Positions 1 through 22,980 of a stretch of 64,000 nucleotides of DNA are shown piece after piece. Position numbers and translations under genes: made by a program. The stretch comes from Amphiscolops sp. MND2022 (taxonomy: Eukaryota). The stretch's first letter is position 1, and the number at the start of each line of letters is the position of its first letter. The notes under the pieces were generated by a model. It had not been told where the DNA came from. It saw only the letters and a list, made by a program, of their open reading frames with translations, and made no database searches. The stretch is taken from positions 30,318,001-30,382,000 of the forward strand of contig OZ076412.1 in NCBI GenBank assembly GCA_964187785.1, read 5' to 3'.

Positions 1-121
1 CGAGTTCGACTGAATCACGTCTTTAGTTTCAAAACCAAAAAATGTGTATGAGCTTTGTTTTTGTCCATATTCTATGAAATCACAAATAAATTTGTTTGTG
101 AGGAAGCTGATACTAATTTAG

Positions 122-1215
122 GCATGGACTACTGGCAGTATGACACCATTGTGTTCACCTTCAAATTCAAACGTCACCCCACATTTTATGTGAACGTACT
201 TCTCTTGCCTTCTATCATGATGGCCTTTCTATCCATCCTCTGCTTCCTGCTTCCAGTCGAGAGTGGGGAGAAAGTGTCGCTGGGAATTACAGTTTTGCTA
301 TCTCAAGCTGTTCAACTTCTAGTGTTATCAGATGTGTTGCCACCCTCTTCCAAAGATTTCCCAATTCTCGCACAATTCGTGGTCTTTACAATTGTGCTGA
401 TTTCAGGGGTGTAAAAATTTCGACCTGTCGTATTGACAGTCGGCCAACTCGAAGCCCCGATATTTTGAGAAAAAATAAAATGAACCTGATTCATGAATTT
501 CAGAAAAAGCTGAAGTTCCAATATCCGCAAAAGTTGGTTCAATACTCATAGTTGGTTGATGAACATCAAGTAATTTCGGTTTCAATTTTTCAACATTTGC
601 TACTAGTTACCAGAAATCACTACAAATTATTGACACTACAAGTATTTGTTAGGTCGAATAAAAACACTGGAAAACACTTGAATATTAATTTTGTTATATT
701 TAGCTTTTTTGTGCAGATTTCTACATTCTAGATATTTCGACATAGATGTTTTGTAGGTAAAACTAAATTTTACACCACTACGTGGTATGGTATCAGTCTC
801 AGTCGTGACGTCAGTGCTAGTTGTTCGAACTTATCTCACTCCGGAGTGTAAAACTTTTCCTCCACTGGGCGTGAAAGCTGTAAATTCCTACATTATGAAG
901 CTACTTCTCATTCCAACTCTCGATGAAAAAGTTCTCGGAGACGGTCAAAAGCATCAGAAAAGTCGAAAAAAGAGCTCCAATCAAATATCACCTCAGTTTA
1001 AGGCGGCCGAAGCCTCGAGAGTTCAGAGAGGAAATGTAGCTGAAGATAATATACAAAGCAGTGATGTTGACACAATGTCTGAAGATGACAAGAAATTGCG
1101 AAATACTCTGGGCTGGAAACTTTTATCAGAGCTAATTGACCGTTTTGTTCTGATCTTGTACATTACAGCCTTGACGGGTGGATCTATTTACTACATTGTG
1201 GCGCTTTTAACATGA
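122..1215 (+). CDS. Nicotinic acetylcholine receptor-type (cation-selective Cys-loop) subunit, 3' exons encoding M1-M4; the ligand-binding domain lies upstream of the window
   Basis: Exon from acceptor ttag|122: YDTIVFTFKFKRHPTFYVNVLLLPS (pre-M1/M1), LPVESGEKVSLGITVLLS (M2), DVLPPSSKDFPILAQFVVFTIVLIS (M2-M3). Resumes at ~757-797 with VSVVTSVLVVRTY (end of M3), an intracellular loop, and WKLLSELIDRFVLILY (M4), stop at 1215. M3 is interrupted by a ~390-bp insert. Confidence 0.93.
404..780. mobile_element. hAT-type MITE inserted in the nAChR M3 coding sequence, candidate transposon-derived intron
   Basis: Left end CAGGGGTGTAAAAATTT (404-420); right end AAATTTTACACCACTA (765-780) is its degenerate reverse complement. 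The left end matches the TSD-flanked MITE at 11208 at 16 of 17 nt. No clean TSD. Confidence 0.75.
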
Positions 1216-1906
1216 TGATAAGAAAAATGAAAAAAATAACGACCGAAATGTCCACACTTTGGTCATGAACACCGGAATCACGGAACCTGCATTATCTACT
1301 TCTAAATCTAGGTTTCCTTTAAAGACGCATAACTTCTCCGTAAAAATTGTATCAAATCATCCGTATGAAATCACATTGGATCTTTCAGCTCTTGTCAACG
1401 GAAGTCGTGAACAACTTTCATTTACTTTTTATTGAATGGCATAAAAATTTTGGTAACTAATCTGAAAACTGACAAACTTGTTGAATTAAATATTTATACA
1501 AAGCTTTACTTCATTCAAACTACTTGATTGGAAGAAACAACTGTTGACCAGAGATTCTTTCAGAAACAATAGACCCATCGTGATTGGAACAGGCTATTTA
1601 TACTGATGCTCTTGAATATATAAAATTCTATACATATTTATATTGTTATCACCCATTTGAACATAAACAAACAACCATGTTGGTCGCGTTTTGTCTATTT
1701 TTGGTATCATGATATCGTCGTCACAATGCTATTAATAGTTACAGGGTCTATGTTTAGAGTTTTGACATAACAAAACCTGAGTGTCATCCCACTTACCCAT
1801 GCCCAAGTCGGCAGACATTCATGCATTCATTAAAATACGTTGAAAACTCACTTGAGAGGTTAAAGAAAGACAGGAAATGAAACTTTGTCCTGAAAAGATC
1901 TTTTCA

Positions 1907-2464
1907 ATGCCTTCCACGAGGAGACAAAAAGCAACGGCAAGGCGTTTAAGAGCAATGGACATCCTCTCCAAAAGTGAGAACATTGATGTAATGTTAGGAG
2001 GATAATTCAAACTCAAACGAGGGAGATCTAGAAAAAAAACCAAATGGACCAGTTAGTCAAGAGCACTCTGGGCCAATTGAATTTTGAGAGGGCTATTTGA
2101 TCTCAGGAAAACGAATTTAGAAAATGGAAACATGACTCCTAGGCCTACACAGACTACAAGAGTCGATGGAAAGAAATATTATCTACCGAGATAAAAATAC
2201 GACAGTCCCAAGAAAGAGATTCGATGATTAGCATGATAGAGCAAAATAAATAAAGCTATTATCTCTGCGGTCAACGATAGAGTTATTCCAGAGATACAGA
2301 AGATTGCCAGTAGATTGCCTTTGAGAGAAAAACAACTGAGACGGGTACGTTCGCTTGTCATCAGTGTCCCGGCGATATACCAGATGGATCCAATGTCAAT
2401 TTAACAAAGAAGAACTCTAGATCCGCCTTTGATACAAAAGACGAAATGGATCACGGTCTTTACA
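1907..2464 (+). repeat. Decayed copy of an ORF-containing dispersed repeat (retroelement ORF1/LTR-like), same family as 15256-15909
   Basis: ATG at 1907 gives MPSTRRQKATARRLRAMDILSKSENIDVMLGG, then SKINKAIISAVNDRVIPEIQ. Both parallel PPSRKQKAKEKRSRQSDVMSDNENLDVMQGS and TRILDATNTAIENRMLPSIK of the 15256 ORF. Interrupted by stops; ends ...TTTACA. Confidence 0.6.
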
Positions 2465-2639
2465 TTTCTCAGAAACTTTATCAAACCAAAGATGAAAATA
2501 CGATCTCCTTACATCAACCCAGTACGTGGTTTACACATGGAGAGAGATAGACTTAATTCCATCAGGGATGTATTGAAATAAAGGCAAATATGTGACTTAT
2601 CCACGACAAACTGAACAAAAACATTCGACAAAATGTGAG

Positions 2640-3330
2640 CTGGATCTGTTCAAATTGTGTAAACTATTATTTCTGGCGATCAGGTATTTAGAGAGGGAAT
2701 GTTTCAACGTTAACAATGACATGTCAAACGAAATGATTTTCAGCCGTATGAGCTCGTTAGCAGCACGTGTTGCTCGGGTGAAAAATTGTCATCTGTTGAA
2801 ATTTTGCGCGAGGAATGATCTGAAGCAACCCGCTTGAAGAGGATCTTGGTGGGGAGGAAATAGAAGGCAAGTTACAATGCACGTCAATAACTCCAATACA
2901 TAGCTTCCATAGAAAAACGATGTCATCTCTGATTAGGCAGTAACACACTGGAAGCATCTTGAGAGATTGAAAACCTGAAACTTCTGAAGAGCATTTAGTT
3001 ATCTAGCGAAGAACTTTATACTGGAACAGTTCGAGTTGATGTAACATAGTTAAAGGGAGAGACCAGACAGGGGCACCGTAAAGCAAAATAGACAAGATAA
3101 GGGATTTGTAAAGTAGGAATTTTCTACTACTAGACACAGCAAATATTCAGCCCCATGCAGAAATTGTGCAGACTCATCGTCTCCAAAATTGAGAACTTCA
3201 CATTTTGTTGGGTGGAATTGGAGACCGTTAAGGTTACTCCAGTCAAGCAGTGAGTTGAAATCATCTTGCACAAGGGAATCAGGAGAAGTGCTGAAATATT
3301 TGAGATCATTAGCGAGAAGGTAAAAAAAAA
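2640..3330 (-). mobile_element. 5'-truncated, decayed CR1/L2-clade LINE: 3' end of the reverse transcriptase ORF
   Basis: Minus strand reads LLANDLKYF (decayed FADD motif), QDDFNSLLDWSNLNGLQFHPTKCEVLNFG, LLYKSLILSILLYGAPVWS and LPVCYCLIRDDIVFLWK, the typical order of C-terminal motifs in CR1/L2 ORF2. Confidence 0.8.
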
Positions 3331-4504
3331 CTGTTCACCACGTTAAAAAAAAACATTCTTGTCTTCGAAACTGTACGTCAACGAACAGTTGGAACTAATA
3401 CACATCTCTGGTTCACCACAATCATTCTGAAAATTTTAACAATTGAAAACTTTCTCTCGAAAGATCAGTTGTAATACGTTTCATGGATTGCCTCTTACAA
3501 ATACAATGTTTCCACCGCAAAAGCTTCGAATGCCCCCTCAGTGGTCCACCGGTGGGATTTCGGTAGATCAGTGGTGACCACCGGTGGACTGCGATTGATT
3601 GGCAACCAGGGATGTGTATGGATAAAAGTCCGTTTTTCAGATTCCGCCCTACCTCATACAAACAATAAGCCAACCTATATATTGGACTCAGGGGCTTTCA
3701 AAAGTGATTGCCATTAATTGAAAACATTGCTTTGCAAAAAATCATTCATTTTGCTGGCAAGTTTTGAAAATGTTGTTTTAAAAAGAGTTGTTACAAGTTT
3801 TTCGTCCCAAAATCTATTGTTGAATTTCAATACTGGTTGTTTTCTTCCACTGATTGTCTGTAGCAAAAAGTTGATGAAAGTACTTTAAAACGGTCTCTTC
3901 TGTTGCTGGCATGGGTATAGAAAACATGAAATGGCAATGCAGAGAATTGTTTCATCTTACAGAGTGAGTGTCTAGCAAGTGCACGTAACCAAACAATTAG
4001 TGTGAAAAGTAAACACTACAGTGCGGATAAAACAATATTATAGTCTATGAAGTCCAATTTATATTCGCAAATAATTGCAATTCATTGGTTTTCAAAACTC
4101 AAATAATTTTAATTGCAATTGTTCAATTTAATAAAGAAGAGAGTGACCAAAACGTCCAACGTTCTAGGACGCCAACCTAGTTTCCAAGAAAGTCTAGAAC
4201 CTCATCCTGTAGAGTCAAAGCAACTTCCAAATTTATATTATTCACAGCTACCACCATTCTATACAGTGCCTGGGTACCTATAGTTTCGCTGTGCTGTCTT
4301 GATAAAGTTTTTGATGGCTTGAATCATACCTAAACTCCTGAGAGTTTCCTCGCTCACAAAAGCGCATGCCCAACCATCATCTACGTATGACACTCTTTCA
4401 CTGCTTTCACCGACACTGCACCAAATTGGTACGATAGATTCCCTCAAGGATGGAGTCGCGATTGGTCTTTGTTCCTCAAACATATAATACGACAAGTTTA
4501 CTCT

Positions 4505-5016
4505 TAACAAGACGGGAACGTCTAAAGTCGGCGCTATATCTAAGGCTTAAAAAGCGCAAGAGACTTTTTTTGAAAAAAAACTTGAAATTTTTGAATTTTT
4601 TTTCTTTCAGAAACCGTCGCATAGTGCCGAAAAATGTAAAAGGGGGACCCTTTGGGCTTTATTAACATATATTATGTTGCAAAATATGAAAAAACTCGAA
4701 GGGGGAAACCCTTTTGAGACATAAAAATTTTTTTTCGAAAAAAAGTCGCACAGTGCCGAAAAAAATCGAAAATGGGGCCCTTTAGTCTCGTCCGGTTTTG
4801 TTGGTTACGTTAAAATAGTAAAAAATGAAAGGGGGACCCTTTTGCACTAATTTCCGCTGACCGGACTTGGCCTTATGGTAGTAGTTTTAGTAGTTTCGAT
4901 TGTAAGAAAAGTGGCCCAATCAGAGTGAGATTGTAGTCTGACGAAAAAAAAGAAAGAAAAAAAACTAGCCACTGTAAGAATCGGGCACTTTTCACTAGAA
5001 AAGCGCCGACTAAAAA
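4505..5016 (+). repeat. Non-autonomous dispersed repeat with subterminal inverted repeats (possibly Helentron/HINE-like), copy 1
   Basis: Starts AACAAGACGGGAACG..AAAGTCGGCGC and ends GCGCCGACTAAAAA, with internal GTGCCGAAAAA / AGGGGGACCC motifs. Related copies at 45829, 51299, 54800 and 55660. Confidence 0.7.
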
Positions 5017-5182
5017 CAGACTTACACCAAATGCTCAGCTTAAAGCAACCTCACTCACAAGGAACACAACGAAAATGTGAGTGATTTCCTACTCAAATTT
5101 GAAACTTCAAATAGTGAAGTTGTAATGTAATGAAGTGATGAAATTTTGGTTCAAAAAGCTCGTTACCCTGTAAAATCTCGAA

Positions 5183-5575
5183 GCAAAACAACCTCATTCA
5201 AAACCACGCCCCCTTTTTTTATGAGAATTTTAACAATTTTTGTCCAAGTGAGCTCCGAATTGTTTTAAATCTCATTGTGGTAAAAATCTTATATTATCAT
5301 ATATCATCATATAATCATATATTTTCCAAGTTTAACTCACGAGAAAATTAACAACCACGAAAAACTTTCGCTCATGCCCCATGGTAGAAATATGAATTAC
5401 ATAACATCACATTAATCAACAGTTGTTCAGTTACGCAAATTACATCAAGATACCTGCTAACGCAAAAGCGTGAGAAGATACCATATTCAAGAAATCACCG
5501 TTTAAATACTGTCACGCCAATTTACTCCTTTATACCAATTCTGTTTCGTTCGAGCAAATCTTTGAGCAAATCGAC
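5183..5575 (+). repeat. Left flanking repeat block of the Gypsy element (segment A then segment B), LTR-like
   Basis: 5183-5385 aligns by eye with 10316-10485, and 5394-5575 with 10120-10300 (for example TCAAGATACCTGCTAACG is shared). Confidence 0.55.
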
Positions 5576-5899
5576 ATTACACTGTGAGCCAATGAATCGG
5601 AAGCTTCACCTTCAGCCCCTTCGCTGGGAGTTTCTTGCAAGTGGCAGGATACGGAAAAGTCCCCTTCGGCCGGTTGGTACAGTTGGATCGAATTATTTGA
5701 ACTGGCAGTACTGGCCAGACATTCAATTTCTGCTTCTGAGTTATTGAAGACGCCGACCGATCAGGACCCAAGAATTCCAGTTTTTTGAGAATTTTTTCTG
5801 TGGAAACTGCTACTAAAAAGGACGAAACCTGCTCTACCTAGCGAATGGAAAAACTGCGCGAAATCAATGATGGACAAATATCCAAATATCCGAGTACTA

Positions 5900-8800
5900 A
5901 CGTCTTCGTAATTGAGTTAGCTGAAAATTTGCAGGTCGTGTTTTGAAATAAGACGTCAGACATCACAGAGACATACATTCCTAGCCAAAAATTGAACAGA
6001 CTGCCGCAGAATTGGAGTCCGGGGGTCAGACTCAAGGCTTGGTTTATGACATTTTCATGCTCAAAATTTCAAACAGGCAGGTACCGCTGAATCTGAGCAC
6101 TGAACGGAACGAGGATCCTGCGGAAACACTTTAATATGCCACAGCGTTTGAAGAAGGCTTAACGAAGCAGCCGACTATCGGACAGCCGGGCACATCCATG
6201 AAAGGTAATGAAGGACCGGTCTTCGCAGTATCAAGTCAAGTAAACAAAAAATGCCGGAGATGCGGAACTCCTGATGCCGGAGTTGCAAGGAACCTGATAC
6301 CATTTGTTATTATTGCCGTTGAAGGCCATTTCGAAAAAATGCTGCCACTCTAAGCAAAAAGGAAAAGAAACCCCAATTCAGGGAAGTTCGACAGAAGCAA
6401 AGGGAGTCGACAGTGCAAAACCATAATATAGGTTAGCATTGATGAACGACTTCAGATTCAAGACAATGACAAACGGTCTGTGTGCCAGTGACAATATTTG
6501 CTATCCACGATATAAAAAACATTATGCGCAGGAGGGACCTTCGAGTCAGACGAATGATAGAGGGGAAAGACGTAGATTTCAATGGCAAAAACCAAAATCT
6601 CGTGGTTTATGTTTTTTGTCACTTACAATTGGGGGTGAGTTGCGCGTTCTATTTAGGAGAAGTCATGAAGAAAATTATCGGAAGGGAGTGGCCTTTTACG
6701 CTAAAATTCCAGATGGTACAAACTTCAGTGGGTGAGTCGGAAAGTGGAGTGGAGAAAACCGTAGTAGAGAAAAAGGTAGAAACAACAGTATTCTCGAACC
6801 ATTTTCCGAAGTTCTTTCCGAGAAAACAAAAGCGAAAGACCGGACAGATAATGAAAGAAAACGCCAAAGTAAAACAGCACAAGGAACGAAAAATCCATAA
6901 CCAAATGCAAAAAACTGTAGATGCCGAAATGAAAAGGCTGATGAAAGACCGATAGGTAAAATTTGCGTTGGATGCAATAGCATTAAAAAACAGATGACAA
7001 CGATCAACTTTGAGTGCCTAACCTAGAAAATCTAATGGAAGTTTTAGCTGAAAGGTTATATAGTAAGGAAGGAGATGTTTGGTATTCATCTTGTCACCTA
7101 ACATATGCGTATGGGAAAATTCCATTACACTTTTAGGAGCAAAACATTGCAAATTTTAGATAACAGGCCGAGAATTACCGGGAAGATACCAATTTAGAAC
7201 GGGCTTGTACGCTCTGACGATTATCCAGACAGAATTGGAAAAAAGTATGGACAATCGTGTAGCTAGGTTTTGAGGAGTATTCGTCCTCATCGATGATATT
7301 TTGATAGTGACAAAAGAAATAAAGCTCTAACATATGACAAAGGTGCGGAAAACACTCAACCCGATTGACTCAGCAAAACTACTAGTGAATGCAGAGAAAG
7401 ATTACCTGGCTCAGTTGTGGCTTAAAATTGGCCAAATCAGGAGTTTCGCAAAATAACCTCAAGGAAACAATGTACTACAGAAAAATTGGCACCAGCGAAT
7501 AAGAAGAACTGAGATGTTTCTGGGTGCAGTTATTCAGTTGAATAATATTATTTCTAGATTCGGCAGCAGTATGTCTTCCGTTCAGATGAAGTTTTAACTG
7601 GTTCTTACATAAAAATGCTTGTTTGAGCATTCAAGGAACTTGGAAGGACAAACGAGCGGGTGGAACAAGTAGCCAAATTATCACAGTCCAAAAGAACCAG
7701 ACCATTGAGAATAATCTTCAATGCAAGTTTCCAAGGACTAGAGGCAGTATTACAGCAGGAAGAAAAAGCTGTTGCACGCCCATAGAGCACGCATCCAGAT
7801 TTTCAACAGGGCAAATTACTCAATAAATTGATTGGATTTGTGAGGAGAAGTGTGGTCACTGGGACATTTTAAAAATTATCTGTACGGAACGGATTTTGAA
7901 AATCTGTCGGATCATACGCCTTGATAAATGTTTTTTAAAGTGAATAAATCAAACGATTCATTCTCGAGTTTTTGAACTAGATGGGTAGACAGATTGCTTC
8001 CAATTGATTTTCGTGTTGCACATGCTCTGAGACAGATTGCTTCCAATTGATTTTCGTGTTGCACATGCTCTGAGGCGAACGCCAGGAATGGCAGGTTATC
8101 TCCACCCCATATCCGTAGAGAGGTGCGATCATTAAGTCTGAGCAAATGTTTAACGATTGGTTTACAATCATGGTAGTGAATGACAATTGCAATCTAGCTA
8201 AATGAATCTTTTGTGGCGAACCAATAAATATGAAAAGTTAAACCAAAGAACCAATCATATGCCAGATTGAAAGTAATAACGTTTTTTAAAAAAACAGCAG
8301 TTGAGTTAAAAGCACGAAAGTGAGGGGTTTAGCAAAAAACAAGCAATGGCCACAAAGGCAGATTTACGCAGTAGTCGTGCATACGTTCAAGCAAGTTATG
8401 AAAAGGATCGGCACCTCCAGAAAATGGTCGAAAAAAATCAATCGCGTGATTCAACACAAATTGCAAGACATGGAGGGAAATTATCAAATCATTTAGCACT
8501 GGTAGGATCAACTTAGTTTCCCTAGACGAAAGTTTAGATATCCCTGAGGACACAAAAGGAAAACTTTTTTACGGCATTCACTTTGGTCAGGAGGGCTCAG
8601 GGAGGCAGTGGATGTCTGGTGGCCAAAAATCCACGAGAATCCATCTATCACAAAGGCCAATAACTGCCCGGAGTGAAGTGGAGCAGGTAAGAAATAAAGT
8701 GTTTGGAAATCTACCAAGTGCAGAAAAACCAAACGAAGAAATAACTCTAGACTTCACAGGACCTTCGCAAGGCTTCAAAATGCCCCAAGGAAATCCGGTA

Positions 8801-9850
8801 AATAGTGGTTTCTGTAGACAATATTTCAGGATGGTCGGAGGAATTTTGTTTCACTAATCCCACTACAGATAAGTGATTGAAGATTTAGAGGAACAAATAG
8901 CGCAACATAGAATCTTCCGAAGGGCAAGAACAGACCCGGGAACCGCTTTCAAAAGTGAGAAATCAAACTGAGAGATTGAAAGAAAGTCATAGAAAGTATG
9001 TAGTGTGCCCAGCTCGAAAAGAGATCATGAGAGAAATGGAAAAGCAAAGTTAGTTATTAGACCAATGAAGAAACAACTCCACAATGATACACGAGTGGTA
9101 CTAGAGCAAAAAAAGTACAGACCTTCCGAATATTCTGTTAGCGATGAGAAATGAAGTTGGAAAGGACAGGTAATCCGCTTTTTGCACGACATTTATGTTT
9201 TGGACGACGTCAAAGACCTAAAACGTAATACCCCTAGAGATGCACTGGTGAATGAATTTCTTTCAGCAAAAGATTCAAAGATCCAACTATAAGAAAAAGA
9301 CTTTAGCCCAGATGTGGATTCTACCGTACTCATTTGCAAGACTTCTGGAGGTTCAACGCTAGAAGGGATTTTAACCGAGCGGAAGACCAAAGTGATCAGA
9401 GAATGGAGACACAGTATAACGATTTTGCTGAATCGTGGAAAGGCAGCGGTTGTATCCGAGATGTGGCTTGAAAGTGAAGAAGGATTGACCGGTCCAAGTG
9501 GAGGAAAAAAGCAAAAGAGGAAAAAATGCCAAAAGTTGAAGAACTGGCTGACAAACCGAAACATCTGAAGCCGAAAAGAAGGACAGTTATATCAGAAGCC
9601 GCAGCAAGCAAAGAAATGGGCTATGCGGTGAAGGAAATGGAAGCAGAGAAGCCAGCCACTACAGCAGAACCTGACACCGGAACAGACGAAGTAGGAGTAA
9701 TTGTGTTTACAAGGTCAGAAGACGGAATATTGGCTTACAACCATAGAGGCGGAGGAGACAAAAGTGAAACGATGCTCATAAACTGGGAGCTTCCAAAGAT
9801 ACGAAGCCGTTCGAGAAAGTTCATGAAGCGACTGGAGTGACAATGCCAAA
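5900..9850 (+). mobile_element. Decayed Ty3/Gypsy LTR retrotransposon internal region (gag knuckle remnant, RT, RNase H, integrase)
   Basis: KKCRRCG (~6250); QKTVDAEMKRLMKD (RT start, ~6905); VFVLIDDILIVTK (YxDD-type motif, ~7280); ASFQGLEAVLQQ and SDH (RNase H); DRLLPIDFRVAH; EKPNEEITLDFTGP and RTDPGTAFKS (integrase). Many stops and frameshifts. Confidence 0.85.
7987..8072 (+). repeat. Exact 43-bp tandem duplication inside Gypsy pol
   Basis: AGACAGATTGCTTCCAATTGATTTTCGTGTTGCACATGCTCTG x2; a frameshifting duplication in the RNase H-integrase linker. Confidence 0.95.
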
Positions 9851-10119
9851 ATATCATGATTAGCGAGGTGGAGGCCAATGAGAAAGAGCAGGAAGTGTAG
9901 AAATAGAGCGTAGTGAACTTATAAAGCTTTTGAAACAACTTGTACTTGTACATGTACTTGTACTTGTGCTTGTACATTCTTGTAGTCTTGTACTGGCAAT
10001 TTCATGCTGTTCTATTTGAGTTGGTATTTATCATCGTGTATACTTGGGTGATATTTTGCTTCTGTTCCCACTAGTACCACTTACTGTTTGTGATTTAAAA
10101 AAAGGAATGTGAGAGCTGT

Positions 10120-10485
10120 GAACTACAAAACATCATGTTATTCAACAATTGTTCAACTACATAAGGTACTTCAAGATACCTGCTAACGTAGAAGCGTGAG
10201 TAATTAACACTTTCAAGATATCACCGTTAAAATACTGCGTCGCCAATATACTCATTTCTATCAATTCTGTTTCTTTCGCCAACTTTGAGCAAACCGACAA
10301 CGCAAAGCGAAACAAGCGAAATAACCTCATTCAAACTACCATCCCTTTTTTATGAACATTTCACTAGTTTTCGTCCAAACTGTGCTCACAACTGTTTTAA
10401 CCACCAGCGTGGTAAAAGTCTTGCAATTATAATTCAAGCATTACTCAAGAATAACAACCATGAGGAAACTCTCGGTCATTCCCTC
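10120..10485 (+). repeat. Right flanking repeat block of the Gypsy element (segment B then segment A), LTR-like
   Basis: Same two segments as 5183-5575, in swapped order. Confidence 0.55.
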
Positions 10486-11207
10486 ACTCAAGAAACAACT
10501 CGTATAATCATGCACACAACTCTTTAGGAATAAGTTTGATAACTTTGTTTCTTCAGGAGAATCACATCGTTCAAAATACTAACAAGAGTAATGAAACAAG
10601 GCAAAACGTCGCAGAATGCCAATTAAAATCCCAACAAAAAAACCGTTTGGACTCCTCCTCTTTTGCATATATGCAACAGTTGTTACAGCGCGGGGTTTGA
10701 AACCACGTACTTTTTGTTCACCAGTCTCGCCCATCCACGCACTCACATGCGGTAACAGTTACACCGAGTGGCAAAGGCAAGAAGGTTCCAACAATATCTT
10801 TTCAGTAGTTACGCACAAACAGCTGGAAAAGGAGAAAAGGCCTCAAAAAGAGAGAATAGAAAGAGGCAAACTGGTAAACCAATTTTGCAAAAACAAATGT
10901 AATTCCCAGCTGACAATTATATTAATTTCAGTCAAATCTACTGGGATGTTTTTAATCCTGTTTTTATGCATACAAGGCTAATTTTTACAATTGTTAACAG
11001 TAGAAAAACTCTGGGATCTTTCTTAAAAATATGCCTAGGATTACAATGCCGCGTTAACTATTTCAACCAACTTGAAAATATATTTTTTTGTCATTTTCTT
11101 TGTCTGGATCACTTTGTTTTTACACGTTAATTTCCTAAGCCTTAACTCATAGAATTAACATTAAAATGTCTATAACTGGTGTCAAATTGCACTCTGACGA
11201 TGACGTC

Positions 11208-11729
11208 CAGAGGTGTAAAAATTTATATTGTATTGCAATATATTGCAATTAAATACAATTAATATATTTATTTAGTTGGAGCAAAAATACAATATATTTA
11301 TTGAAATAAGAGAAATATTGTCAGAGCACTACAATATTTTGCGCAAAAAGTTTATGCAATATAGAAATAAAACTTCATTTAATATGCATTTTAAACGGAC
11401 CTCCAATTCTTCCTGCCAACAAATATGACTGGGTGCCTGGGACTTCCAACTTAGCGGTACGACTTTTCAGCCATGCTCGATTCACCCTTCCTGACTACCG
11501 CAAGGAAACGCTTCCTATTAATTTCGAGAGTGTATTATACAAATAGACAACATTGGGATGTTTGCCTTGTAAATGAATGTTTCTCTGCCCAATAAATAAT
11601 TTCACAATTTATTGTTTTTCTAAAATATTGCAGGACAATAAATACAATATTTTTATTGCTGAAATTGAACCAAACAATATATTTATCTTTTTGAAAAAAT
11701 ATACTTAAATACAATATTTCACACCCCTG
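11208..11729. mobile_element. hAT-superfamily MITE (522 bp)
   Basis: TIRs CAGAGGTGTAAAA / TTTCACACCCCTG with a perfect 8-bp TSD ATGACGTC (11200-11207 and 11730-11737). Confidence 0.92.
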
Positions 11730-11815
11730 ATGACGTCACCAATCAAATCTATATAACGACTGAATTCGATTTTCATTAGAAGGGCGGTACAATTGATAGG
11801 TCTATAAAATAAAAC

Positions 11816-12014
11816 GGATCTTTTCTGTTAATTCCCCCCATCAGTTTAATCCCCCCAGTTAAGCGGTCAAGTGAAATTATCACTGAATTAATAGTAACAA
11901 CCAATCAAATTGCAGTATTTTATAACTCTAACTGCAACTGAAACACATCGCTGATAGTGGTGGGGAATTAAAATTTATGCGCTTACTGTGGGGGGGAATT
12001 AACAGAAAAGATCC
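11816..12014. mobile_element. MITE (199 bp) with GG-starting TIRs and an 8-bp TSD (Merlin-like signature)
   Basis: Perfect 24-bp TIR GGATCTTTTCTGTTAATTCCCCCC / GGGGGGAATTAACAGAAAAGATCC; TSD AATAAAAC at 11808-11815 and 12015-12022. The superfamily assignment is inference. Confidence 0.9.
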
Positions 12015-12552
12015 AATAAAACTATTGCATGTTAAAACTTGAAAAACTTGTTGCAAAGGTTCGATTCGGGCCCAAATTCAGAATGCATCTTTTAGGCAGC
12101 TTTATAAATTGCAATTACAACAGTAAAGTTTTGATGCTGGGAAGTTTCAGTGAGAATTTTGTAGAATGATGGTGAATTTGCTTAGCAACCTACAAAAACT
12201 TAAGTTCCAGCAGTTTCAACCAAGAAAAAGATAGATTGCAAGAAGAGTATCACTGATGAGAATGAAACCAACGTTAGTTTTCACAAAAAGCAGATATCTT
12301 TGATTTTGAGCTATTTGGATTGCTAAAAATTCAATTGGAAAAAATCTTCAGTCCCATTTTTCCACCGCATTGTAATTTTGAGTGAATACGCAATATAAAA
12401 CGCGGCAGTTAGGTGAAGCACAGCATTTGCGCATTTCTGAGAAAAAGAAAATACGGTTTTTAGATGGTACACATGTGCTGAAAGTGGTCGCTAGTTTTTA
12501 TAATGACGCAGAAATACATGCCACGAATTTTGTTTGAACGTAAAATTTGGTA

Positions 12553-13868
12553 CAGTTTAACTTCAGTATTACACACCTCGCTGGGAGAAAACGCTCAAGT
12601 ACGTTATTCTGAAGTGTGTATTATAGGCAAAAAAAGACCAAATGATAAAAATCAATTGAAAAAATCAGTTATGGAAGTTTGAACTTTATTCTCCATTATT
12701 GATTTATATATAGCAAGACCGATTTTCTCGGATTGTTGAGCTATATCACCGAGTCCCATTGAGCGCAGCTTCCGAGCAAGTTTTTCGGTATATTCAAAAG
12801 CTTCAAGATCGGAAATTTCCGATTCTTGTATTTCTTCTTCGTTTTCTTCACAATTCTGCTCATCTTCAAGACTGATTTCACAGCTTTCGATCTTCAAACG
12901 ATCCGCAATGATTTTGGCCTGTTGTTAGGGGTGTTTTAATAAATAATTTAAAAGTAAATTAATTTTGAATTAATTTAACAATTATTTCCGCTGTTGAACA
13001 CCCTACCAAAAATCAATCCCCCCTTCAGAGAAATTTTTTTTTGTTTTTTAAAATTTTTGCAATAATTGCATTTATTTATTTTCGTTAAAGAAAGTAAAAA
13101 AGGTTATTTTTGCGTAAAATATTATTGCAAAATATTTTTGAACACCCTTGCCTGTTGTTGAAGCAAAAGACCGCTCACCTCCACTTTATTTCCTCGCATT
13201 GTAACAAACCACATAAAGCTCTTTACCTAACTGGGGATGATCTCCTTGTCGAAGTTTTGTTCGGTTAGAAGGCATATTGGAATGGAACGCGTTGAAAATT
13301 TCTTCTTTTTTGGTAAGAATTGTGTTTAATGATGAAATATTAGGCAGTTGAAACCTCGAAACAATTGCTGCTTTAGCACCCTTTTGTGCTGAAACTTCTT
13401 CATAAGCTTTTATGATTGTAAACTTTTGTTCAATGGTACGTTTCGTACGTTTCGTACGTTTTGTACATTGGGCAGGCATTTTGGAATGAATTAGTAATTT
13501 ATGCGTGTTAAAAGACGCTACATACAATAACACGTGGTTAATAAACTGTTAGTATGCGTGGAAACGATGTGGAGCCGAGCACATTCGGTCTTTTTGTTAC
13601 TTAACAAATAGAGCCGGAGCAAAGATTGCTTTGTTTATGATTGGTTGCGAGACAAATTGCGTAATAGCCGAGTTTGTTTGCATGGCATTTTAGCATTTCG
13701 GCCGAACAATTACGTCACGCTATACTGAATGTTGCTTAAAAGCGCATGTGCGCTTTAAGCGTAATTTTCTAACTTTAATCTTTCAATTCTGTACGCTGGG
13801 GCACAAAATACGTGCGTTATTCTGAAGGTTACACTATAGTGCACGTGTGTGATACTGAAGTTGAACTG
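12553..13868 (-). mobile_element. Internally deleted pogo/Tigger (Tc1-mariner superfamily) DNA transposon
   Basis: 24-bp TIRs CAGTTYAACTTCAGTATYACACAC with TA on both flanks. Minus-strand transposase remnant has CENP-B-type HTH domains (KRTIEQKFTIIK...RTKLRQGDHPQLGKELY...VSGLLLQQQAKIIADRLKI) joined to an acidic tail ending KVQTSITDFFN. The DDE domain is absent. Confidence 0.9.
12926..13150. mobile_element. hAT-type MITE (225 bp) nested in the Tigger transposase
   Basis: Ends TAGGGGTGTT / AACACCCTTG with a perfect 8-bp TSD CCTGTTGT (12918-12925 and 13151-13158). Removing it rejoins LLQQQ-AKIIADRL. Confidence 0.9.
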
Positions 13869-15255
13869 TATTGCTGAATTTCGTTTTATTGCAGCGTCGG
13901 CATTTGAGAACACGCAACATCAGCTGATACATGTATCTGTACCGCTATTCGATTTGTCTATGTGTTTTTACTTTCTGAAAACGTCGTAGAAAGTAGAATA
14001 TTCCACGCCATATCGTTGGAAATTTCGTTTTTGTTTGGTAAGTTGAGTAATACTACGTAGCATTATAACTTTCAGAACTCTTTAATAGTAAAAATCTGTT
14101 TTCAAATACAAATTATACTCTGTTTTCCTATTATTGACTATAGCAATCTTATAATTGCATTTTTTTATTGTTGTTGTTTGTCATTTCAATGCAGTATTGA
14201 CTTAAAAAGAAGTAAAATTGAAGGTAACAATGTCGAAGATAAAAAGCGTCTAGATTTGTGCAACGGCAAACTAAAGTCATAAAGTATCAATACCAACGCG
14301 TTAGTTTTTAGTGGACGCTTTTTGAAAAAAAGGCAGCCCGGGTTGGGGTGGGCCATTGAAATGGCCCCGACCTTTCTGCCATGGGCTATCGATGGACCAT
14401 CGCGATGTTGGTCTGGATACCAAAATCGTCTTTCCAAGGACTCTTTTTATAACATAAGGGCATCAAATCTATTTTGAATGACAGTAAAAGAGACGCAAAC
14501 GACTATTTAATGCCTGTATATTTTTTCCCGATAGATATGAAACAAAATGAACGTTAAAGTAGAAATCTCTTTGGGACACCTGGGGAAAAGCTAATGTCTA
14601 TAATAACCGGTTATTACAGTGATTGGTTTTTCTCCAGATGTCCAAAAGAGATTTCTACTTTTTCGTTCATTTTGTTTCATAACCATCTGGAAAAAATATA
14701 CAGTGCATCGAATAGTAGTTCGCGTCGCTTACAAAGCTAGACGGTACCGGATAGTCCCCCTCGGTGTATCTTTGACGCTCTGTGCCTTTGTTCGAATCTT
14801 CTTTTGAGGGTACCTCTATTTTTTAAAGTTGATCAGGTAAAAAGTCTTCTTTAGCGAAAAACGCTTTGCATGTTTTTTGGCACTGTGAAGAAAAAGAGTT
14901 GAACTATTTTTTGTTGCCCAAGTGCGTACAAACAACAACTTAAAGATCGATATCAGTACTAGAGCACCGAGTAGTTATCGAATGCAAAAACTTTGCAAAA
15001 TTTTTTGCTAAATTCTTATCAGTTAAATGAAAGTTACTTGTGACCTAATAACTAGGCTATAGCTAAATTTAGACTGATTTCATCTTAAATTTAGTTACCT
15101 TACGCACAAATTCATGCTTGTCATGCTGATTTGACTATACATACACATAATTTGTTGCTAAAGGATCATTTTGAAGATATGCACTGCTTACACTCAATAC
15201 ACGATATTGTTCATTTGTCATTCTGACTATTCACTATTGAAATCGCACTTCTCGT

Positions 15256-15909
15256 TTGAATAAGCCCCCATCTAGAAAACAGAAAGCAAAGGAAAAGCGC
15301 TCTAGGCAATCTGACGTGATGTCTGATAATGAAAATCTTGATGTAATGCAAGGGAGTTATCAAGGAAATAACAGAGAAATGCAAGAAGGTAATAGCGACA
15401 ACGAAATGGACGAAAAGTTAAATAGACACGAAAGAAGATCGAATCAAAATGGTGGTGAATTCAGGTCTTACTTGAACACTAATCTTAGTCAGAATAGTGG
15501 TTTAACCGTAGCAACTAGTAGGGCGACTAGCTCAGAAATTTCATCAGAGATGTCTAGAAAACTCGAGGAAATGTCATCTGATCTAAATACACGCATTCTA
15601 GATGCGACTAACACTGCAATTGAGAACAGGATGTTACCGAGCATCAAAAATGCTGTTGGAGGCCAAAATTCAGCTAGAAACACAAATTTGGACCTTCGGT
15701 CAGATGTACCGCATCCAAATAATTTTAGTCAAGTACATTCTCAGGGGACTTTCGGTCTATCGGGCTGCATTCGGAAAATGCTAGCCAGGTGGCTCAGGAT
15801 GCTCAGAAGGACTTCCCGAGATTAGTAGGAATGAGTAGTAACCGGATAAATCACCATGGAGAGAAATAAGTGGATTCTAGTCAAAGTGATGAAGATGAAG
15901 GTTACGACA
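15256..15909 (+). repeat. ORF-containing dispersed repeat (retroelement ORF1/LTR-like, 189-aa ORF), same family as 1907-2464
   Basis: Basic N-terminus (PSRKQKAKEKRSRQSDVMSDNENLDVM) and coiled-coil-like middle homologous to the 1907 copy; ends ...GGTTACGACA. TTG start, no recognisable enzyme domain. Confidence 0.55.
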
Positions 15910-16930
15910 GATTACAATGCAGCTTCCACTATATCAATTAAAACCGAAAAAATTTCCACTTCTTCACCACCGCGATCACATTGTTTTCACGCGTAAGTTC
16001 CTCAAGTAAGTACCTTATGTGATCACTGTTAGTAAAATAGCACGCTGGATATGACGCTACTTTAAAACTTATAGTGTGAGTGAAATTTATTTACATTAAA
16101 ATCGCGGTAAAATTGATGAAGATCTCAGCTGCTTTCAAAATTAGAGCGGCGTCTCAATGAAACCCTCTAAAACTTTGCGGCGCAGAATTGCCGCCAAATT
16201 TAGTATGCATGTCATAGGCAGCTTGATAAAATTAAATCGAATCAGTGAAGTTTTGTTGCAGGGACGCTTCTTTGAGAATTTTATAAAATCATGGAAAATT
16301 AGGTTGGTAACCTACAAAACCATGTAAAAAGTTCAAGCAGTTCCAACCAGGGAATTATTAATGTCATTTGGGTAGTTGCAGTAATATTTAGGTAAAAGTT
16401 CTTTACGCTTATCGTCGGAGCTCTTGCATTTCAAAAACAGATGATACTCATCTGGTTTTACATCGGGTCTCACAAAAGGGGCAGGGCTCTACTGGACAGT
16501 TTAGGAATTTCGATTTTACGTTGGTAGAGCAGTTGCAGCACACCTAAAAATTGCTAGCTTTACTCTTTCTGATCTTAAATGAGTTTCCAAATAGGGTTCA
16601 AAGGCAAGTCGGTATTTATATAGTCGGTGTGTGAATCTCTGCAGAAATGAAAAAACTTCTGTTTTGTCAAAAATAAATTGCTTTTGGCGTTTTTTTATGC
16701 CTAATCAATGCGCGGACTTGGTCCGGATCCGGCTTGCTATATATTAAATTTTGAAAGAATGCAAAATTTGAAAACGAAATAGGAAATGAAGTTTCTGCAA
16801 TAAAGGATAAGAGAGAGCAGAATAACGCTGAGCAGTCTGTCGGGGAAAAAGAATTGCGGAATTGGAACTCCTTTTTCTATTTTGGTCTCTTGGTGAAAAA
16901 CTCCTGTTTCGATGTGTTTTTTTAATGTAG

Positions 16931-18730
16931 ATGGATGCGGCTAATGAAGAAATTGGTCAGATGGATCTGCAATCAAGCCAGCATTTTGCTCAATTGCAAC
17001 GAGATTTCGGAGATCGTCTCAACGAAGAAATGACTTCACAAGTTCAAGCATGGGAATCAACTCAAGTAAATATAGCTGTCATAGGCGAAACATCTGTGGG
17101 CAAATCTTCTCATATCAATGCGCATTTTGGAAGTTATGTCTGCATCGTCGGTCATTCTGGAAACGTTACCCAAGAGGTGACCCCTTATGGACAAACCGGG
17201 CGCATGACTGGATCTAATCCAGGGATATTGAAATGATTATTTTTGAACGATAGTTTCATTGATTGTTCAGAGTCTATTCCTAGAGACTACATTGCAACAT
17301 TTTTCTCTGAAGCTTAGCTATACTAGAATGACCTATTGGTCAACTTAAGGTAACTCTTAGAAGCATCCCGATTGCACTGAAAAATGTTTCCAACATAGAA
17401 AAAAAACGCACTAAGGATTGCTTCAGTGGAATTTGGAATTGATCATCAGAGAACTCCCAATAAACATCAGAGATGTTTGAACTTTTGTGTTTCTGAAATA
17501 TTTTTCGATTCTTGAATTGTATTTCATTTTTGTTGGCTTTTCAATTGTATCAACGAGAGACGGAATCATCAATTTTTCACTTTGATCATCATACTCACTT
17601 TGATCGTTTTCCAATATATTTTTTGAAATCCCTGATTCAATTGAGACACGGATCGATCGGAAGTTTTGGTGTTTTGGGATCTGCCTGGATTCAACACTAT
17701 GGACTACAATAAAGAAACATATAATGGGGTTGTGAAATTAGACCGATATCACTTCTTTTTAATCGTTACTGACAAAATTTTCACCCATGATATTCATTGG
17801 CTTCTGGGCGAAATTCTTCGACGTAATAAGAAATTTTTTCTAATTCGCACCAAGATTGATCAAGCTGTCGAGAGTGCAAGGAAGCATCCTCCCAGACAAA
17901 GTCGGGAGGAAGTTATGGCAGAAATTAGGGGTAAAATTGAAGGAGATCTTAGGAAGAGTTTAGAGGTGTTCAAACGCCAAAACCCCAACGTGAGCTATGC
18001 ATACGACCCCAACTATTTCAAAGTATATTTTGTTGACAACTATGATCCCTCAGATTACGATTTTCGTCAGTTGCGCGAAGATATTTGGGCGTCAATGACT
18101 TCTTTGCAAAAAGAGGTGTATCTAATGCAATGCAGGAGCTACACGGCGCAAATGCGAGATGAAAAATACAAAAACTTCAAATGGAGAATCCCCAAAATCG
18201 CTGCTGGTTCAGCTGCCGGGGCTCCAATTCCGGGAAGCACTTTGCTGTTTGACATTCCCCTGATCACGTATGAAGTATTGCAATACATGAAAGCATTTGG
18301 CGTTGATAAGCAAACAATCCGTGAGATGGAAGTCGACGCTGGATTTGATCCCGGGAGAGTTGAGGATCCATTCGCTAACTTCTTGAAAAGATCTCATAAA
18401 GCTCTATACACGATTCGCGAGACGATTGGCGAGCAGAGATCTGTCACAGTGCCGGGTTTGAGACATCTGGCTCCAATGATACTCGGGGCTCTTTCACTGA
18501 TTGCTGTATCTGGCACTGTCGAAACAACTGCCGAGGCTGCTGTTCCCGTTGTAGGAGTTGCTGTGGCATCTCTTCTCTCATTCGGCACATCTTCAACGCA
18601 ACTCTATTGGCGTAAGTTTTCACCTTCCTTGCAGCTCATTGATTCTTCCTTTTTTGCAGAGAGATGGCATTATACGGTAAAAGCAACATCATTATTTTCC
18701 GTGTTCTGTGCTACTGGAAAATCTTTTTAA
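16931..18730 (+). CDS. Interferon-inducible GTPase (IRG/p47, IRGC-like), coding sequence interrupted by a 423-bp insert; 3' end uncertain
   Basis: G1 NIAVIGETSVGKSSHINA, switch I VTQEVTPY, G3 VFWDLPG, YHFFLIVT, G4 FLIRTKID, and C-terminal AAGSAAGAPIPGSTLLFD helices, all typical of IRG proteins. A GTAAGT donor at 18612 means the true last exon may differ from the read-through ORF. Confidence 0.85.
17220..17634. mobile_element. Old hAT-type MITE (415 bp) inside the IRG coding sequence between G2 and G3
   Basis: Ends CAGGGATATTGAAA / TTTGAAATCCCTG. Degenerate 8-bp TSD ATCTAATC (17212-17219) vs ATTCAATT (17635-17642), 5/8 with three C/T transitions. Removing element plus one TSD (423 nt) fuses the two IRG ORFs in frame. 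Confidence 0.65.
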
Positions 18731-19709: not shown

Positions 19710-19812
19710 GATTCGTCGCTCGGGAAAAACGTTGATTCGGCAGTAGGAAATGATTCGTCGCTCGGGAAAAACGTTGATTCGGCAGTCGGAATTAATTCGG
19801 CGCTTGGGAAAA
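19710..19812 (+). repeat. 42-bp minisatellite (~2.5 units); duplicated at 24079-24181
   Basis: GATTCGTCGCTCGGGAAAAACGTTGATTCGGCAGTAGGAAAT x2 plus a degenerate third partial unit. Confidence 0.9.
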
Positions 19813-22853: not shown

Positions 22854-22980
22854 GGGGCTCTTCCACTGATTGCTGTATCTGGCACTGTCGAAACAACTGC
22901 CGAGGCTGCTGTTCCCGTTGTAGGAGTTGCTGTGGCATCTCTTCTTTCATTCGGCACATCTTCAACGCAACTCTATTGAC
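22854..22980 (+). pseudogene. Duplicated 3' fragment of the IRG exon carrying a premature stop
   Basis: Copy of 18485-18611; TGG (Trp) has become TGA just before the GTAAG donor. Confidence 0.85.

What the first reader, a model, noticed from the sequence alone, without database searches (positions are those of the whole stretch)
404..17645. Shared geometry of two exonic insertions suggests an introner-like system using CAG|GG donors
Seen in both genes: the element starts CAG-GG, and the host sequence just beyond the insertion starts NAG (CAG 794-796; GAG 17643-17645). The TIR's CAG can therefore replace the host NAG, and a GG…AG excision is frame-neutral. Established: introner transposons create introns by co-opting splice sites from TIR and TSD sequence, and non-GT donors occur in a few lineages. 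Inference: a downstream AG at exactly this offset at both exonic sites is unlikely by chance (very roughly 1 in 12-16 per site), hinting that only spliceable insertions survive. The same TIR family also occurs at 11208 (intergenic) and, more loosely, at 12926 (in a dead Tigger). Two cases are only suggestive.
Basis: inference. Interest (0 to 1): 0.85.

Follow-up and report, generated by a model that had tools for sequence, protein, structure and literature searches.

The report
Jumping-gene pieces probably serving as introns
Two small hAT-type transposon remnants sit inside the coding exons of two genes of a probable acoel worm. They can be removed without damage only as introns that start with GG instead of the usual GT, and indirect evidence suggests that at least one of them is so removed, but no RNA data were available to prove it.

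Summary
Both insertions start CAG|GG. Removing 407-796 (390 nt) or 17223-17645 (423 nt) keeps the frame and restores gap-free alignment to relatives.

The claim of an AG "at exactly this offset" holds only at the GTPase site. The receptor site has 5 extra bases and no convincing target-site duplication. The two elements share only hAT-type ends, so they are not one family.

New evidence:
- Both insertions are present in both haplotypes of the sequenced animal.
- The receptor gene shows 5 synonymous and 0 non-synonymous haplotype differences, so it still looks selected. The GTPase shows 8:3, no constraint signal.
- A same-genome paralogue (85% identical) has an uninterrupted exon across the receptor site.
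- The receptor gene also has two GC-AG introns after exonic AG, one with its GC donor conserved in a paralogue.

The organism is probably an acoel.

Best reading (about 0.6): these are hAT-derived introns spliced at AG|GG...AG in a lineage with relaxed donor position +2. This resembles Eurytemora GA/GG donors and Fritillaria MITE introns.

There is no RNA evidence, and the GTPase may simply be broken. The scan noted the same class elsewhere in this genome (s1-193540).

The parts
1..120 (+). 3' end of intron 3 of the Cys-loop receptor gene. This is a GC-AG intron whose donor AAG|GCATGC lies upstream of the window, at L004 8451.
   Evidence: The junction RSFKG|MDYW aligns without a gap to paralogue P0141, and the GC donor is conserved in the L007 paralogue.
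121..406 (+). Receptor exon D, covering M1, M2 and the first half of M3. It ends ...ATT TCA G.
   Evidence: translation; Pfam Neur_chan_memb positions 1-68, E 1e-17.
404..780 (+). Element 1, a 377-bp hAT (Tol2-like) TIR element. The 5' TIR is 404-419 (CAGGGGTGTAAAAATT) and the 3' TIR is 765-780 (reverse complement TAGTGGTGTAAAATTT).
   Evidence: The TIR is 15/16 identical to that of the 11208 element. Tol2 ends are CAGAGGTGTAAA... (PMC4818426).
407..796 (+). Proposed GG-AG intron of 390 nt (TCAG|GGGGTG...GGTATCAG|TCT). The CAG repeated at both ends makes 404-793, 405-794 and 406-795 give the same product.
   Evidence: enumeration; exact fit to 7 relatives.
781..793 (+). 13-nt spacer CGTGGTATGGTAT between the 3' TIR and the CAG. 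It may be a degenerate TSD copy plus a 5-nt GGTAT duplication.
   Evidence: It matches the left flank GCTGATTT at 4/8, which is not above chance.
797..1215 (+). Receptor exon E, covering the second half of M3, the M3-M4 loop, M4 and the stop codon.
11208..11729 (+). Intergenic Tol2-like hAT MITE with a perfect 8-bp TSD, ATGACGTC (11200-11207 and 11730-11737). It is followed by ACC, not NAG.
12926..13150 (+). 225-bp hAT MITE (TAGGGGTGTT...AACACCCTTG) with a perfect TSD, CCTGTTGT. It is followed by TGA.
16931..17222 (+). IRG-type GTPase exon 1, from Met through the P-loop GETSVGKS to ...TGSN, ending CCA G.
17220..17634 (+). Element 2, a 415-bp hAT-type element. The TIRs are CAGGGATATTGAAA (17220-17233) and, as reverse complement, CAGGGATTTCAAAA (17621-17634).
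   Evidence: The TIRs pair in the predicted fold.
17223..17645 (+). Proposed GG-AG intron of 423 nt (CCAG|GGATAT...CAATTGAG|ACA).
   Evidence: The resulting loop length equals that of paralogues P0003 and P0004.
17635..17642 (+). Putative right-hand TSD copy, ATTCAATT, against ATCTAATC at 17212-17219 (5/8 match).
17646..18612 (+). IRG GTPase exon 2, containing the G3 motif DLPG and the G4 motif TKID. The open frame runs on to 18730, but a GTAAGT at 18613 and a 4-nt haplotype indel suggest the coding part ends or is spliced near 18612.

Best explanation
Both insertions are old, fixed remnants of hAT-superfamily non-autonomous transposons that landed in coding exons and now behave as spliceosomal introns.

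Proposed mechanism:
- The transposon's own terminal CAG|GG imitates the exon-end AG plus the intron-first G of a 5' splice site.
- The first AG after the degenerate target-site duplication serves as the 3' splice site.
- What is removed equals what was inserted. The mRNA is therefore restored except for the junction codon. In the receptor this codon reads Val (G|TC), with its G supplied by the TIR, where most relatives have Ile.

This can only work because the lineage, probably an acoel, tolerates non-T at donor position +2 after an exonic AG. Insertions lacking a suitably placed AG would destroy the gene and be lost.

Shown here: the insertion anatomy, fixation in both haplotypes, absence from paralogues, exact restoration of the frame and alignment, purifying selection on the receptor gene, and GC-AG introns in the same gene.

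Inferred, not shown: actual splicing at GG-AG, relaxed U1/U6 recognition, and the survivorship filter.
For: 1. Exact restoration. Removing 407-796 gives ...FTIVLIS|VSVVTSVLVV..., which aligns with zero gaps to seven relatives. One of these is an 85%-identical same-genome paralogue whose M1-M4 exon is uninterrupted. Removing 17223-17645 gives a 12-residue loop, the same length as in paralogues P0003 and P0004.
2. Other in-frame excisions are worse. They add 14 residues inside M3 (GT409-AG756), delete M3 residues, or delete 24-30 residues of the GTPase including the conserved TQEVTPY segment.
3. Both haplotypes of the sequenced animal carry both insertions (L003 and L005).
4. Receptor gene haplotype differences are 5 synonymous, 0 non-synonymous and 0 indels in 1150 coding nt. 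The element has 2 substitutions plus 2 indels in 390 nt, and other non-coding DNA has 70 plus 17 in 9296 nt. P(0 of 5 non-synonymous) under neutrality is 0.001-0.002.
5. The TSD and TIRs are decayed (4-5/8 and 11-13 of 14-16), whereas nearby intergenic MITEs have perfect TSDs. The open frames of about 385 and 458 codons are nevertheless intact. This suggests old insertions in genes that stayed selected.
6. The same receptor gene has two GC-AG introns after exonic AG (CAG|GCATGT and AAG|GCATGC). They are placed by gap-free homology, and the second donor is conserved in the L007 paralogue.
7. Hints from other readers and one follow-up in this scan report many GG/GA/GC donors and hAT-TIR introns elsewhere in this genome. 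These are unverified notes.
8. Precedent: GA/GG donors with obligate exonic AG make up 12% of introns in Eurytemora affinis (PMC5714493), and MITE-derived non-canonical introns occur in Fritillaria (PMC11282704).
Against: - No transcript evidence of any kind. No spliced protein is in the 5.8-billion-protein collection, and there is no junction match in JGI contigs. Both results are uninformative because this species seems absent from the RNA data.
- The GTPase gene has 8 non-synonymous: 3 synonymous haplotype differences, and its coding divergence equals that of the element (about 0.95%). This is what a pseudogene would show, although it also fits a fast-evolving immunity gene.
- The selection signal in the receptor rests on 5 substitutions. 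Three of them lie 1.2 kb upstream, where recombination could decouple them from the insertion.
- Site 1 has G, not the A that Eurytemora GA/GG donors almost always have, at +3. Its TSD is not demonstrable.
- No second copy of either element was found in about 190 kb of this genome, so hAT membership rests on the termini alone.
Confidence: 0.6

Rival explanations
1. The insertions are plain gene-disrupting events. One or both genes are recently dead members of large families (Cys-loop receptors, IRG GTPases), and the frame-neutral AG|GG...AG solution is coincidence found after the fact.
For: - GTPase haplotype differences are 8 non-synonymous: 3 synonymous, at the same rate as in the element.
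- Both families have many paralogues, and one receptor paralogue (L007) carries an in-frame stop.
- The geometry at site 1 needs an ad hoc 5-nt duplication, and the TSDs are weak.
- There is no RNA evidence.
Against: - The receptor gene shows 5 synonymous: 0 non-synonymous differences and no indels.
- Both open frames are intact in both haplotypes although the TSDs and TIRs look old.
- The exact, gap-free restoration at both sites has a chance of roughly 0.003 for a pre-set offset.
- The gene's other introns use non-GT donors.
Confidence: 0.25
2. The elements are removed by ordinary GT-AG splicing at cryptic sites, giving altered proteins. In the receptor this would be GT409...AG756, which is in frame but adds 14 residues. 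In the GTPase it would be GT17133 or GT17151...AG17645, which deletes 24-30 residues.
For: These combinations are in frame and open. GT409 is followed by GTGTAA, and AG756 has a T-rich tract.
Against: - The 14 added residues (VKLNFTPLRGMVS...) would sit in the middle of helix M3 and are absent from all seven relatives.
- The GTPase deletions would remove the conserved TQEVTPY segment.
- Purifying selection on the receptor argues for a functional product.
Confidence: 0.08
3. The elements are excised by something other than the major spliceosome. Candidates are structure-guided removal through TIR pairing, as for euglenid non-conventional introns, or precise somatic DNA excision.
For: Element 2's TIRs pair in the predicted fold and bring the ends together. 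Euglenid non-conventional introns are MITE-like, with paired ends and TSD-like repeats (PMC11282704).
Against: - The folds are no better than shuffles (z -1.3 and -1.1), and element 1's TIRs do not pair in the best fold.
- hAT excision leaves footprints (general knowledge).
- No such pathway is known in animals.
- The AG|G...AG boundaries fit spliceosomal rules.
Confidence: 0.04

Closest known systems
GA/GG-donor introns of the copepod Eurytemora affinis (Robertson 2017, PMC5714493); Oikopleura has similar G*-AG introns (from my own knowledge)
   Same: G at +1 with a non-T at +2. AG is obligate at the end of the upstream exon. The 3' end is an ordinary AG. The introns are lineage-specific and recent. 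Site 2 (CAG|GGA) also has the +3 A.
   Different: No transposon origin was reported for the copepod introns. Site 1 has G at +3. Here the donor is the transposon's own terminus. The organism is probably an acoel, and no splicing data exist.
MITE-derived non-canonical introns of the tunicate Fritillaria borealis (Henriet 2019, as summarised in PMC11282704 and PMC13326754)
   Same: Non-autonomous DNA transposons inserted in exons are removed as introns with non-GT donors. The idea is that the spliceosome neutralises insertions.
   Different: Fritillaria boundaries are mostly AG-AC or AG-AT and affect most introns. Here the 3' end is a normal AG, the conserved intron is GT-AG, and only +2 is relaxed. 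The AG-start registers possible here (405-794 AG..TC; 17221-17643 AG..TG) do not match the Fritillaria types.
Introners (Micromonas, fungi, many aquatic eukaryotes; Gozashti 2022, PMC9860276)
   Same: A DNA transposon with TIRs and a TSD creates an intron. One splice site comes from the element and the other from the duplicated or adjacent host sequence.
   Different: Introners are defined by many near-identical copies forming introns in unrelated genes, and they carry canonical sites. Here there are two unrelated, decayed, apparently low-copy elements with GG donors.
Splicing of Ds/dSpm from maize exons and of Tc1 from C. elegans pre-mRNAs (recalled from the literature, not checked here)
   Same: Exonic DNA-transposon insertions are partly rescued because sequences at or near the element ends act as splice sites. 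Ds is also a hAT element with a CAGGGATGAAA end, like element 2.
   Different: Those cases use cryptic canonical sites, are imprecise, and usually leave altered mRNAs in mutant alleles. Here the excision would be exact and the insertions are fixed.

Membership tests
hAT-superfamily non-autonomous element (MITE) | Terminal inverted repeats beginning YARNG | tested here: met
   Element 1: CAGGGGTGTAAAAATT paired with TAGTGGTGTAAAATTT (13/16). Element 2: CAGGGATATTGAAA paired with CAGGGATTTCAAAA (11/14). The element 1 and 11208 ends match the Tol2 termini CAGAGGTGTAAA.
hAT-superfamily non-autonomous element (MITE) | 8-bp target-site duplication | tested here: inconclusive
   Site 2 matches 5/8 (p about 0.04). 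Site 1 matches 4/8 with 5 surplus bases. The intergenic relatives at 11208, 12926 and 50311 have perfect 8-bp TSDs.
hAT-superfamily non-autonomous element (MITE) | Multiple related copies in the genome | tested here: not met
   No second copy of element 1 or element 2 was found in about 190 kb of this genome (window plus L001-L008). Only terminal similarity was seen. The whole genome was not searchable.
Introner / transposon-derived spliceosomal intron | Removed from the transcript by splicing | not testable with these tools
   No RNA data for this species could be reached. The only support is indirect, from selection on the receptor gene.
Introner / transposon-derived spliceosomal intron | Absent from the same site in paralogues or orthologues | tested here: met
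   Uninterrupted exons are found in L006, L007 and L008 for the receptor and in P0002-P0004 for the GTPase.
Introner / transposon-derived spliceosomal intron | Splice sites supplied by the TIR and the TSD or adjacent host sequence | tested here: met
   The exon-end AG and the intron-first G are TIR bases 2-4. The acceptor AG is the first AG after the TSD-like stretch. This is geometry only.
Introner / transposon-derived spliceosomal intron | One element family forming many introns in unrelated genes | tested here: not met
   The two elements are unrelated internally.
GN-AG (Eurytemora-type) non-canonical U2 introns | Exonic AG at -2/-1, G at +1, non-T at +2, AG at the 3' end | tested here: met
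   TCAG|GGGG...TCAG| and CCAG|GGAT...TGAG|.
GN-AG (Eurytemora-type) non-canonical U2 introns | A at +3 (nearly obligate in the copepod) | tested here: inconclusive
   Met at site 2 (GGA) and not at site 1 (GGG). The GC donors of the same gene have A at +3.
Fritillaria-type AG-AC/AG-AT MITE introns | Intron boundaries AG...AC or AG...AT | tested here: not met
   The AG-start registers would end in TC (405-794) and TG (17221-17643).

The most novel reading that the evidence does not exclude
A probable acoel lineage has evolved, independently of tunicates and copepods, a 5' splice-site recognition that needs only AG|G. The CAG|G termini of hAT transposons therefore act as ready-made donors. Exonic hAT insertions next to an AG become near-neutral and are a continuing source of new GG/GA/GC-AG introns. 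The two cases here would be individual, datable examples in which the junction codon still carries a base donated by the transposon.
Probability: 0.4. Interest if true: 0.75.

Novelty: new variant of a known kind. Interest (0 to 1): 0.6.

Why it matters
How new introns arise in animals, and why a few lineages tolerate non-GT donors, are open questions. So far there are only a handful of animal examples (Fritillaria, Eurytemora, Oikopleura). A third or fourth independent lineage would give a concrete, testable mechanism if the donor is literally the end of a hAT transposon and the acceptor is the first AG beyond the target duplication. That mechanism links transposon termini, relaxed +2 recognition and intron gain.

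It would also matter for annotation. Gene finders that insist on GT or GC donors will break such genes; in the collection searched, both genes here are stored only as split pieces. [quoted passage not shown]

Tried and rejected
- Transcript or annotated-protein evidence. Only the split pieces of both genes are in the protein collection. Exact junction strings are absent from JGI contigs. Both results are uninformative.
- RNA structure. The folds of both proposed introns are no better than shuffles.
- Rfam. No snRNA or other RNA family was found in the window.
- A third case in the window. The split CNDP2-like gene at 48116-50202 has an ordinary GT-AG intron.
- TSD at site 1. No alignment is better than 4/8. 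The alternative 8-mers ending in CAG (GATTTCAG and GGTATCAG, 6/8) are explained by splice-site consensus and conflict with the family TIR starting at CAG.
- AG-enrichment test. Only 3-4 clean intergenic hAT MITEs were found in about 190 kb, none followed by NAG on either side. The sample is too small.
- Empty-site DNA for the GTPase. The paralogue is too diverged at the loop.
- Canonical donors for receptor intron 3. My first models used C|GTTTGG or A|GTTCAG. I gave them up when the paralogue showed they would delete 8 or add 4 residues; the A|GT version cannot be fully excluded.
- Fritillaria-type boundaries do not fit.
- Polarity of introns 0, 1 and 3 (gain in this lineage or loss in L006/L008) was not resolved.


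Full report
**What is in the sequence**

The window is animal DNA with about 37% G+C.

- Positions 121-406 encode M1, M2 and the first half of M3 of a Cys-loop ligand-gated channel (Pfam Neur_chan_memb 1-68, E 1e-17). Positions 797-1215 encode the rest of M3, the loop and M4.
- Positions 16931-17222 and 17646 onward encode an IRG-type GTPase with intact P-loop, DLPG and TKID motifs.
- Each gene is interrupted by an AT-rich block that starts CAGGG. In each gene the open frame stops a few codons into that block.

**The elements**

- Element 1 (404-780) has the ends CAGGGGTGTAAAAATT and, as reverse complement, TAGTGGTGTAAAATTT.
- Its 5' end differs by one base from that of a 522-bp element at 11208-11729, which has a perfect 8-bp duplication, ATGACGTC.
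- Both ends match the termini of the fish hAT transposon Tol2 (CAGAGGTGTAAAG... and CAGAGGTGTAAAAAG...), quoted as blunt-end primers in PMC4818426.
- Element 2 (17220-17634) has CAGGGATATTGAAA and, as reverse complement, CAGGGATTTCAAAA. From memory, its first seven bases are those of the maize Ac/Ds end.
- A fourth element (12926-13150, TAGGGGTGTT ends) has a perfect duplication, CCTGTTGT.
- The four elements share no internal similarity. No other copy of element 1 or 2 occurs in the roughly 190 kb of this genome that I could reach. "The same TIR family" therefore means the terminal bases only.

**Geometry**

The TIR ends at 17634, eight bases ATTCAATT resemble the left flank ATCTAATC at 5/8, and GAG follows at 17643-45.

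At site 1 it does not hold exactly. Thirteen bases (CGTGGTATGGTAT, with GGTAT repeated in tandem) separate the TIR end from the CAG at 794-796. The best 8-mer matches the left flank at only 4/8. A 5-base slippage inside a decayed duplication would reconcile the two sites, but that is an assumption.

What holds at both sites is the outcome. Excising 407-796 (390 nt) or 17223-17645 (423 nt) has boundaries AG|GG...AG| and keeps the frame.

I enumerated every G-start, AG-end, stop-free excision:
- For the receptor, the only canonical option is GT409...AG756, which adds 14 residues in the middle of M3.
- For the GTPase, canonical donors (17133, 17151) delete 24-30 residues, including the conserved TQEVTPY segment.
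- AG occurs at 5.8% of positions. A pre-specified AG at both sites has a chance near 0.003. Because the offset at site 1 was chosen afterwards, this overstates the significance.

**Is the exact excision the biologically right one?**

A search of 1.8 billion representative proteins with exon D found relatives whose single open frames run through M3. Seven of them align across the site without any gap...VLIS|ISVV... against ...VLIS|VSVV... here.

The best, P0141 (85% identical), is a paralogue in the same sample and genome (contig ctg182004). Its DNA reads GTGCTCATTTCA ATC TCAGTGGTG where this gene, after excision, reads GTGCTGATTTCA G|TC TCAGTCGTG. The junction codon is Val here and Ile in most relatives, and its first base comes from the transposon's CAG.

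For the GTPase, three uninterrupted paralogues (68-75% identical) span the site. The excised product has a 12-residue loop, as in two of them.

**Are the genes alive?**

The same ENA sample (ERZ25074608, metaMDBG contigs at about 100x) holds both haplotypes.
- L002 and L004 are identical to the window.
- L003 is the other haplotype for the GTPase region, and L005 is the other haplotype for the receptor.
- Both insertions are present in both haplotypes.

Haplotype differences for the receptor, over five exons placed by homology (1150 nt):

| Region | Substitutions | Indels | Length (nt) |
|---|---|---|---|
| Coding exons | 5, all synonymous | 0 | 1150 |
| Element 1 intron | 2 | 2 | 390 |
| Other non-coding DNA | 70 | 17 | 9296 |

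Zero non-synonymous out of five has a probability of 0.001-0.002 under neutrality. Since both haplotypes carry the element, this argues that the gene has been selected while carrying it, which requires clean removal of the element from the mRNA.

Two caveats apply. There are only five changes. Three of them lie 1.2 kb upstream, where recombination could give them an older history.

The GTPase differs at 8 non-synonymous and 3 synonymous codons, and its coding divergence (about 0.95%) equals that of the element. That fits a pseudogene or a fast-evolving immunity gene, so for this gene the question stays open.

A softer argument applies to both genes. The duplications and TIRs look much more decayed than those of the neighbouring intergenic MITEs, which are perfect. 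Yet both open frames are intact in both haplotypes.

**Non-GT donors elsewhere in the same gene**

I used the paralogue as a guide and DNA upstream of the window (L004). The receptor gene has five introns in the part recovered:

| Intron | Boundaries | Type | Note |
|---|---|---|---|
| 0 | CAG\|GCATGT...TTTCAG | GC-AG | |
| 1 | CCG\|GTTGAA...ATCGAG | GT-AG | |
| 2 | CAG\|GTTTGC...TTCCAG | GT-AG | Classical Cys-loop position; present in all paralogues examined |
| 3 | AAG\|GCATGC...ATTTAG | GC-AG | A 7-base direct repeat, AGGCATG, spans both junctions |
| 4 | The transposon intron | GG-AG | |

- The GC readings rest on gap-free homology: LYQ|LIDVDEK and RSFKG|MDYW.
- Intron 3's GC donor is conserved in a second paralogue (L007, AAG|GCATCC).
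- Introns 0, 1 and 3 are missing from paralogues L006 and L008. Whether they were gained or lost was not resolved.
- Three of the four variable introns therefore have non-GT donors after an exonic AG, while the conserved intron is canonical.
- Notes by other readers of this scan, and one follow-up (s1-193540), report many GG/GA/GC donors and hAT-TIR-bounded introns elsewhere in this genome. I treat these as leads. My own check is limited to this gene.

**Organism**

An intronless CNDP2-like dipeptidase in the window (56379-57818) is closest to proteins of the acoels Convolutriloba macropyga (71%) and Symsagittifera roscoffensis (70%). All other animals are near 60%. In a tree it falls inside a 100/100-supported clade with them. 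The G+C content matches the 36.7% reported for S. roscoffensis (PMC9911081). The genome is therefore probably that of an acoel without a public NCBI annotation.

I found no paper linking acoels with introners or non-canonical splice sites.

**Comparison with known systems**

- *Eurytemora affinis.* GA/GG donors make up about 12% of its introns. They always follow an exonic AG, nearly always have A at +3, and sit in lineage-specific introns of unknown origin (PMC5714493). Site 2 fits this fully. Site 1 has G at +3.
- *Fritillaria borealis.* It removes MITE-derived introns, but mostly with AG-AC or AG-AT ends (PMC11282704, PMC13326754). Those boundaries do not fit here.
- *Introners.* They co-opt TIR and TSD sequence for splice sites (PMC9860276), but they are defined by many near-identical copies, which is not the case here.

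The best description is a new variant. hAT termini act as AG|G donors in a lineage with a relaxed +2 position, giving exact GG-AG introns.

**Verdict**

- The anatomy is confirmed, with corrections.
- The intron interpretation is well supported indirectly for the receptor gene. My estimate for that gene alone is about 0.7.
- It is open for the GTPase, at about 0.45.
- The survivorship idea (only insertions next to an AG persist) is reasonable but untested. It rests on two cases.
- No RNA evidence could be obtained, and that is the decisive missing piece.

Noticed in passing
L004 4820-5224 and L004 8451-9334 (the latter ends at window 120): Two GC-AG introns of the receptor gene, both starting G|GCATG after an exonic AG. 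The second has a 7-base direct repeat, AGGCATG, across both junctions and an 8-nt subterminal inverted repeat (TCAGCTTC/GAAGCTGA). This hints at an insertion origin. Its GC donor is conserved in paralogue L007.
   Followed up: partly
window 21482-25616 (compare 18485-21730 with 22854-26121): A tandem duplication of about 4.1 kb covers the 3' part of the GTPase gene and its downstream DNA (97% identical copies). The other haplotype (L003) has a single copy.
   Followed up: partly
window 12536-13868: A 1.3-kb segment is absent from the other haplotype (L003), so it is an insertion/deletion polymorphism. It includes the Tigger-like fragment and the 225-bp MITE at 12926. The MITE at 11208 has a deletion of about 130 bp in L003.
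   Followed up: partly
window 50311-50763: Another clean hAT MITE (TIR CAGTGATGATC, perfect TSD CCTGTACT) lies about 110 bp upstream of the start of the CNDP2-like gene on the minus strand.
   Followed up: no
window 48116-50202 (-) and 56379-57818 (-): Two CNDP2-like dipeptidase paralogues. One is intronless. The other has a single ordinary GT-AG intron (49187-49833) that contains (CT)n and (GT)n microsatellites.
   Followed up: partly
L004 5366-6235 (receptor intron 1); window 4506-5018, 45831-46174, 55886-56192; several sites in L003 and L006: A dispersed repeat. Its 5' end is AACAAGCCGGGAACGGCCCAAGTCGGCGCCATATCTAAGGCTCAAAAA. Its 3' end has a hairpin (GTCGGGC...GCGCCGAC) followed by TAAAAACA. 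It has internal tandem units. It is SINE-like or an unclassified element.
   Followed up: no
L007 8430-8432: The receptor paralogue that shares introns 1-3 with the window's gene has an in-frame TGA in the M3-M4 loop. It may be a pseudogene.
   Followed up: no
window 18613-18659: A GTAAGT follows ...QLYWR, which is where paralogues P0002 and P0003 end. T-rich tracts ending in AG follow, and the haplotypes differ by a 4-nt indel just downstream. The GTPase C-terminus may be spliced or may end here rather than at 18730.
   Followed up: no
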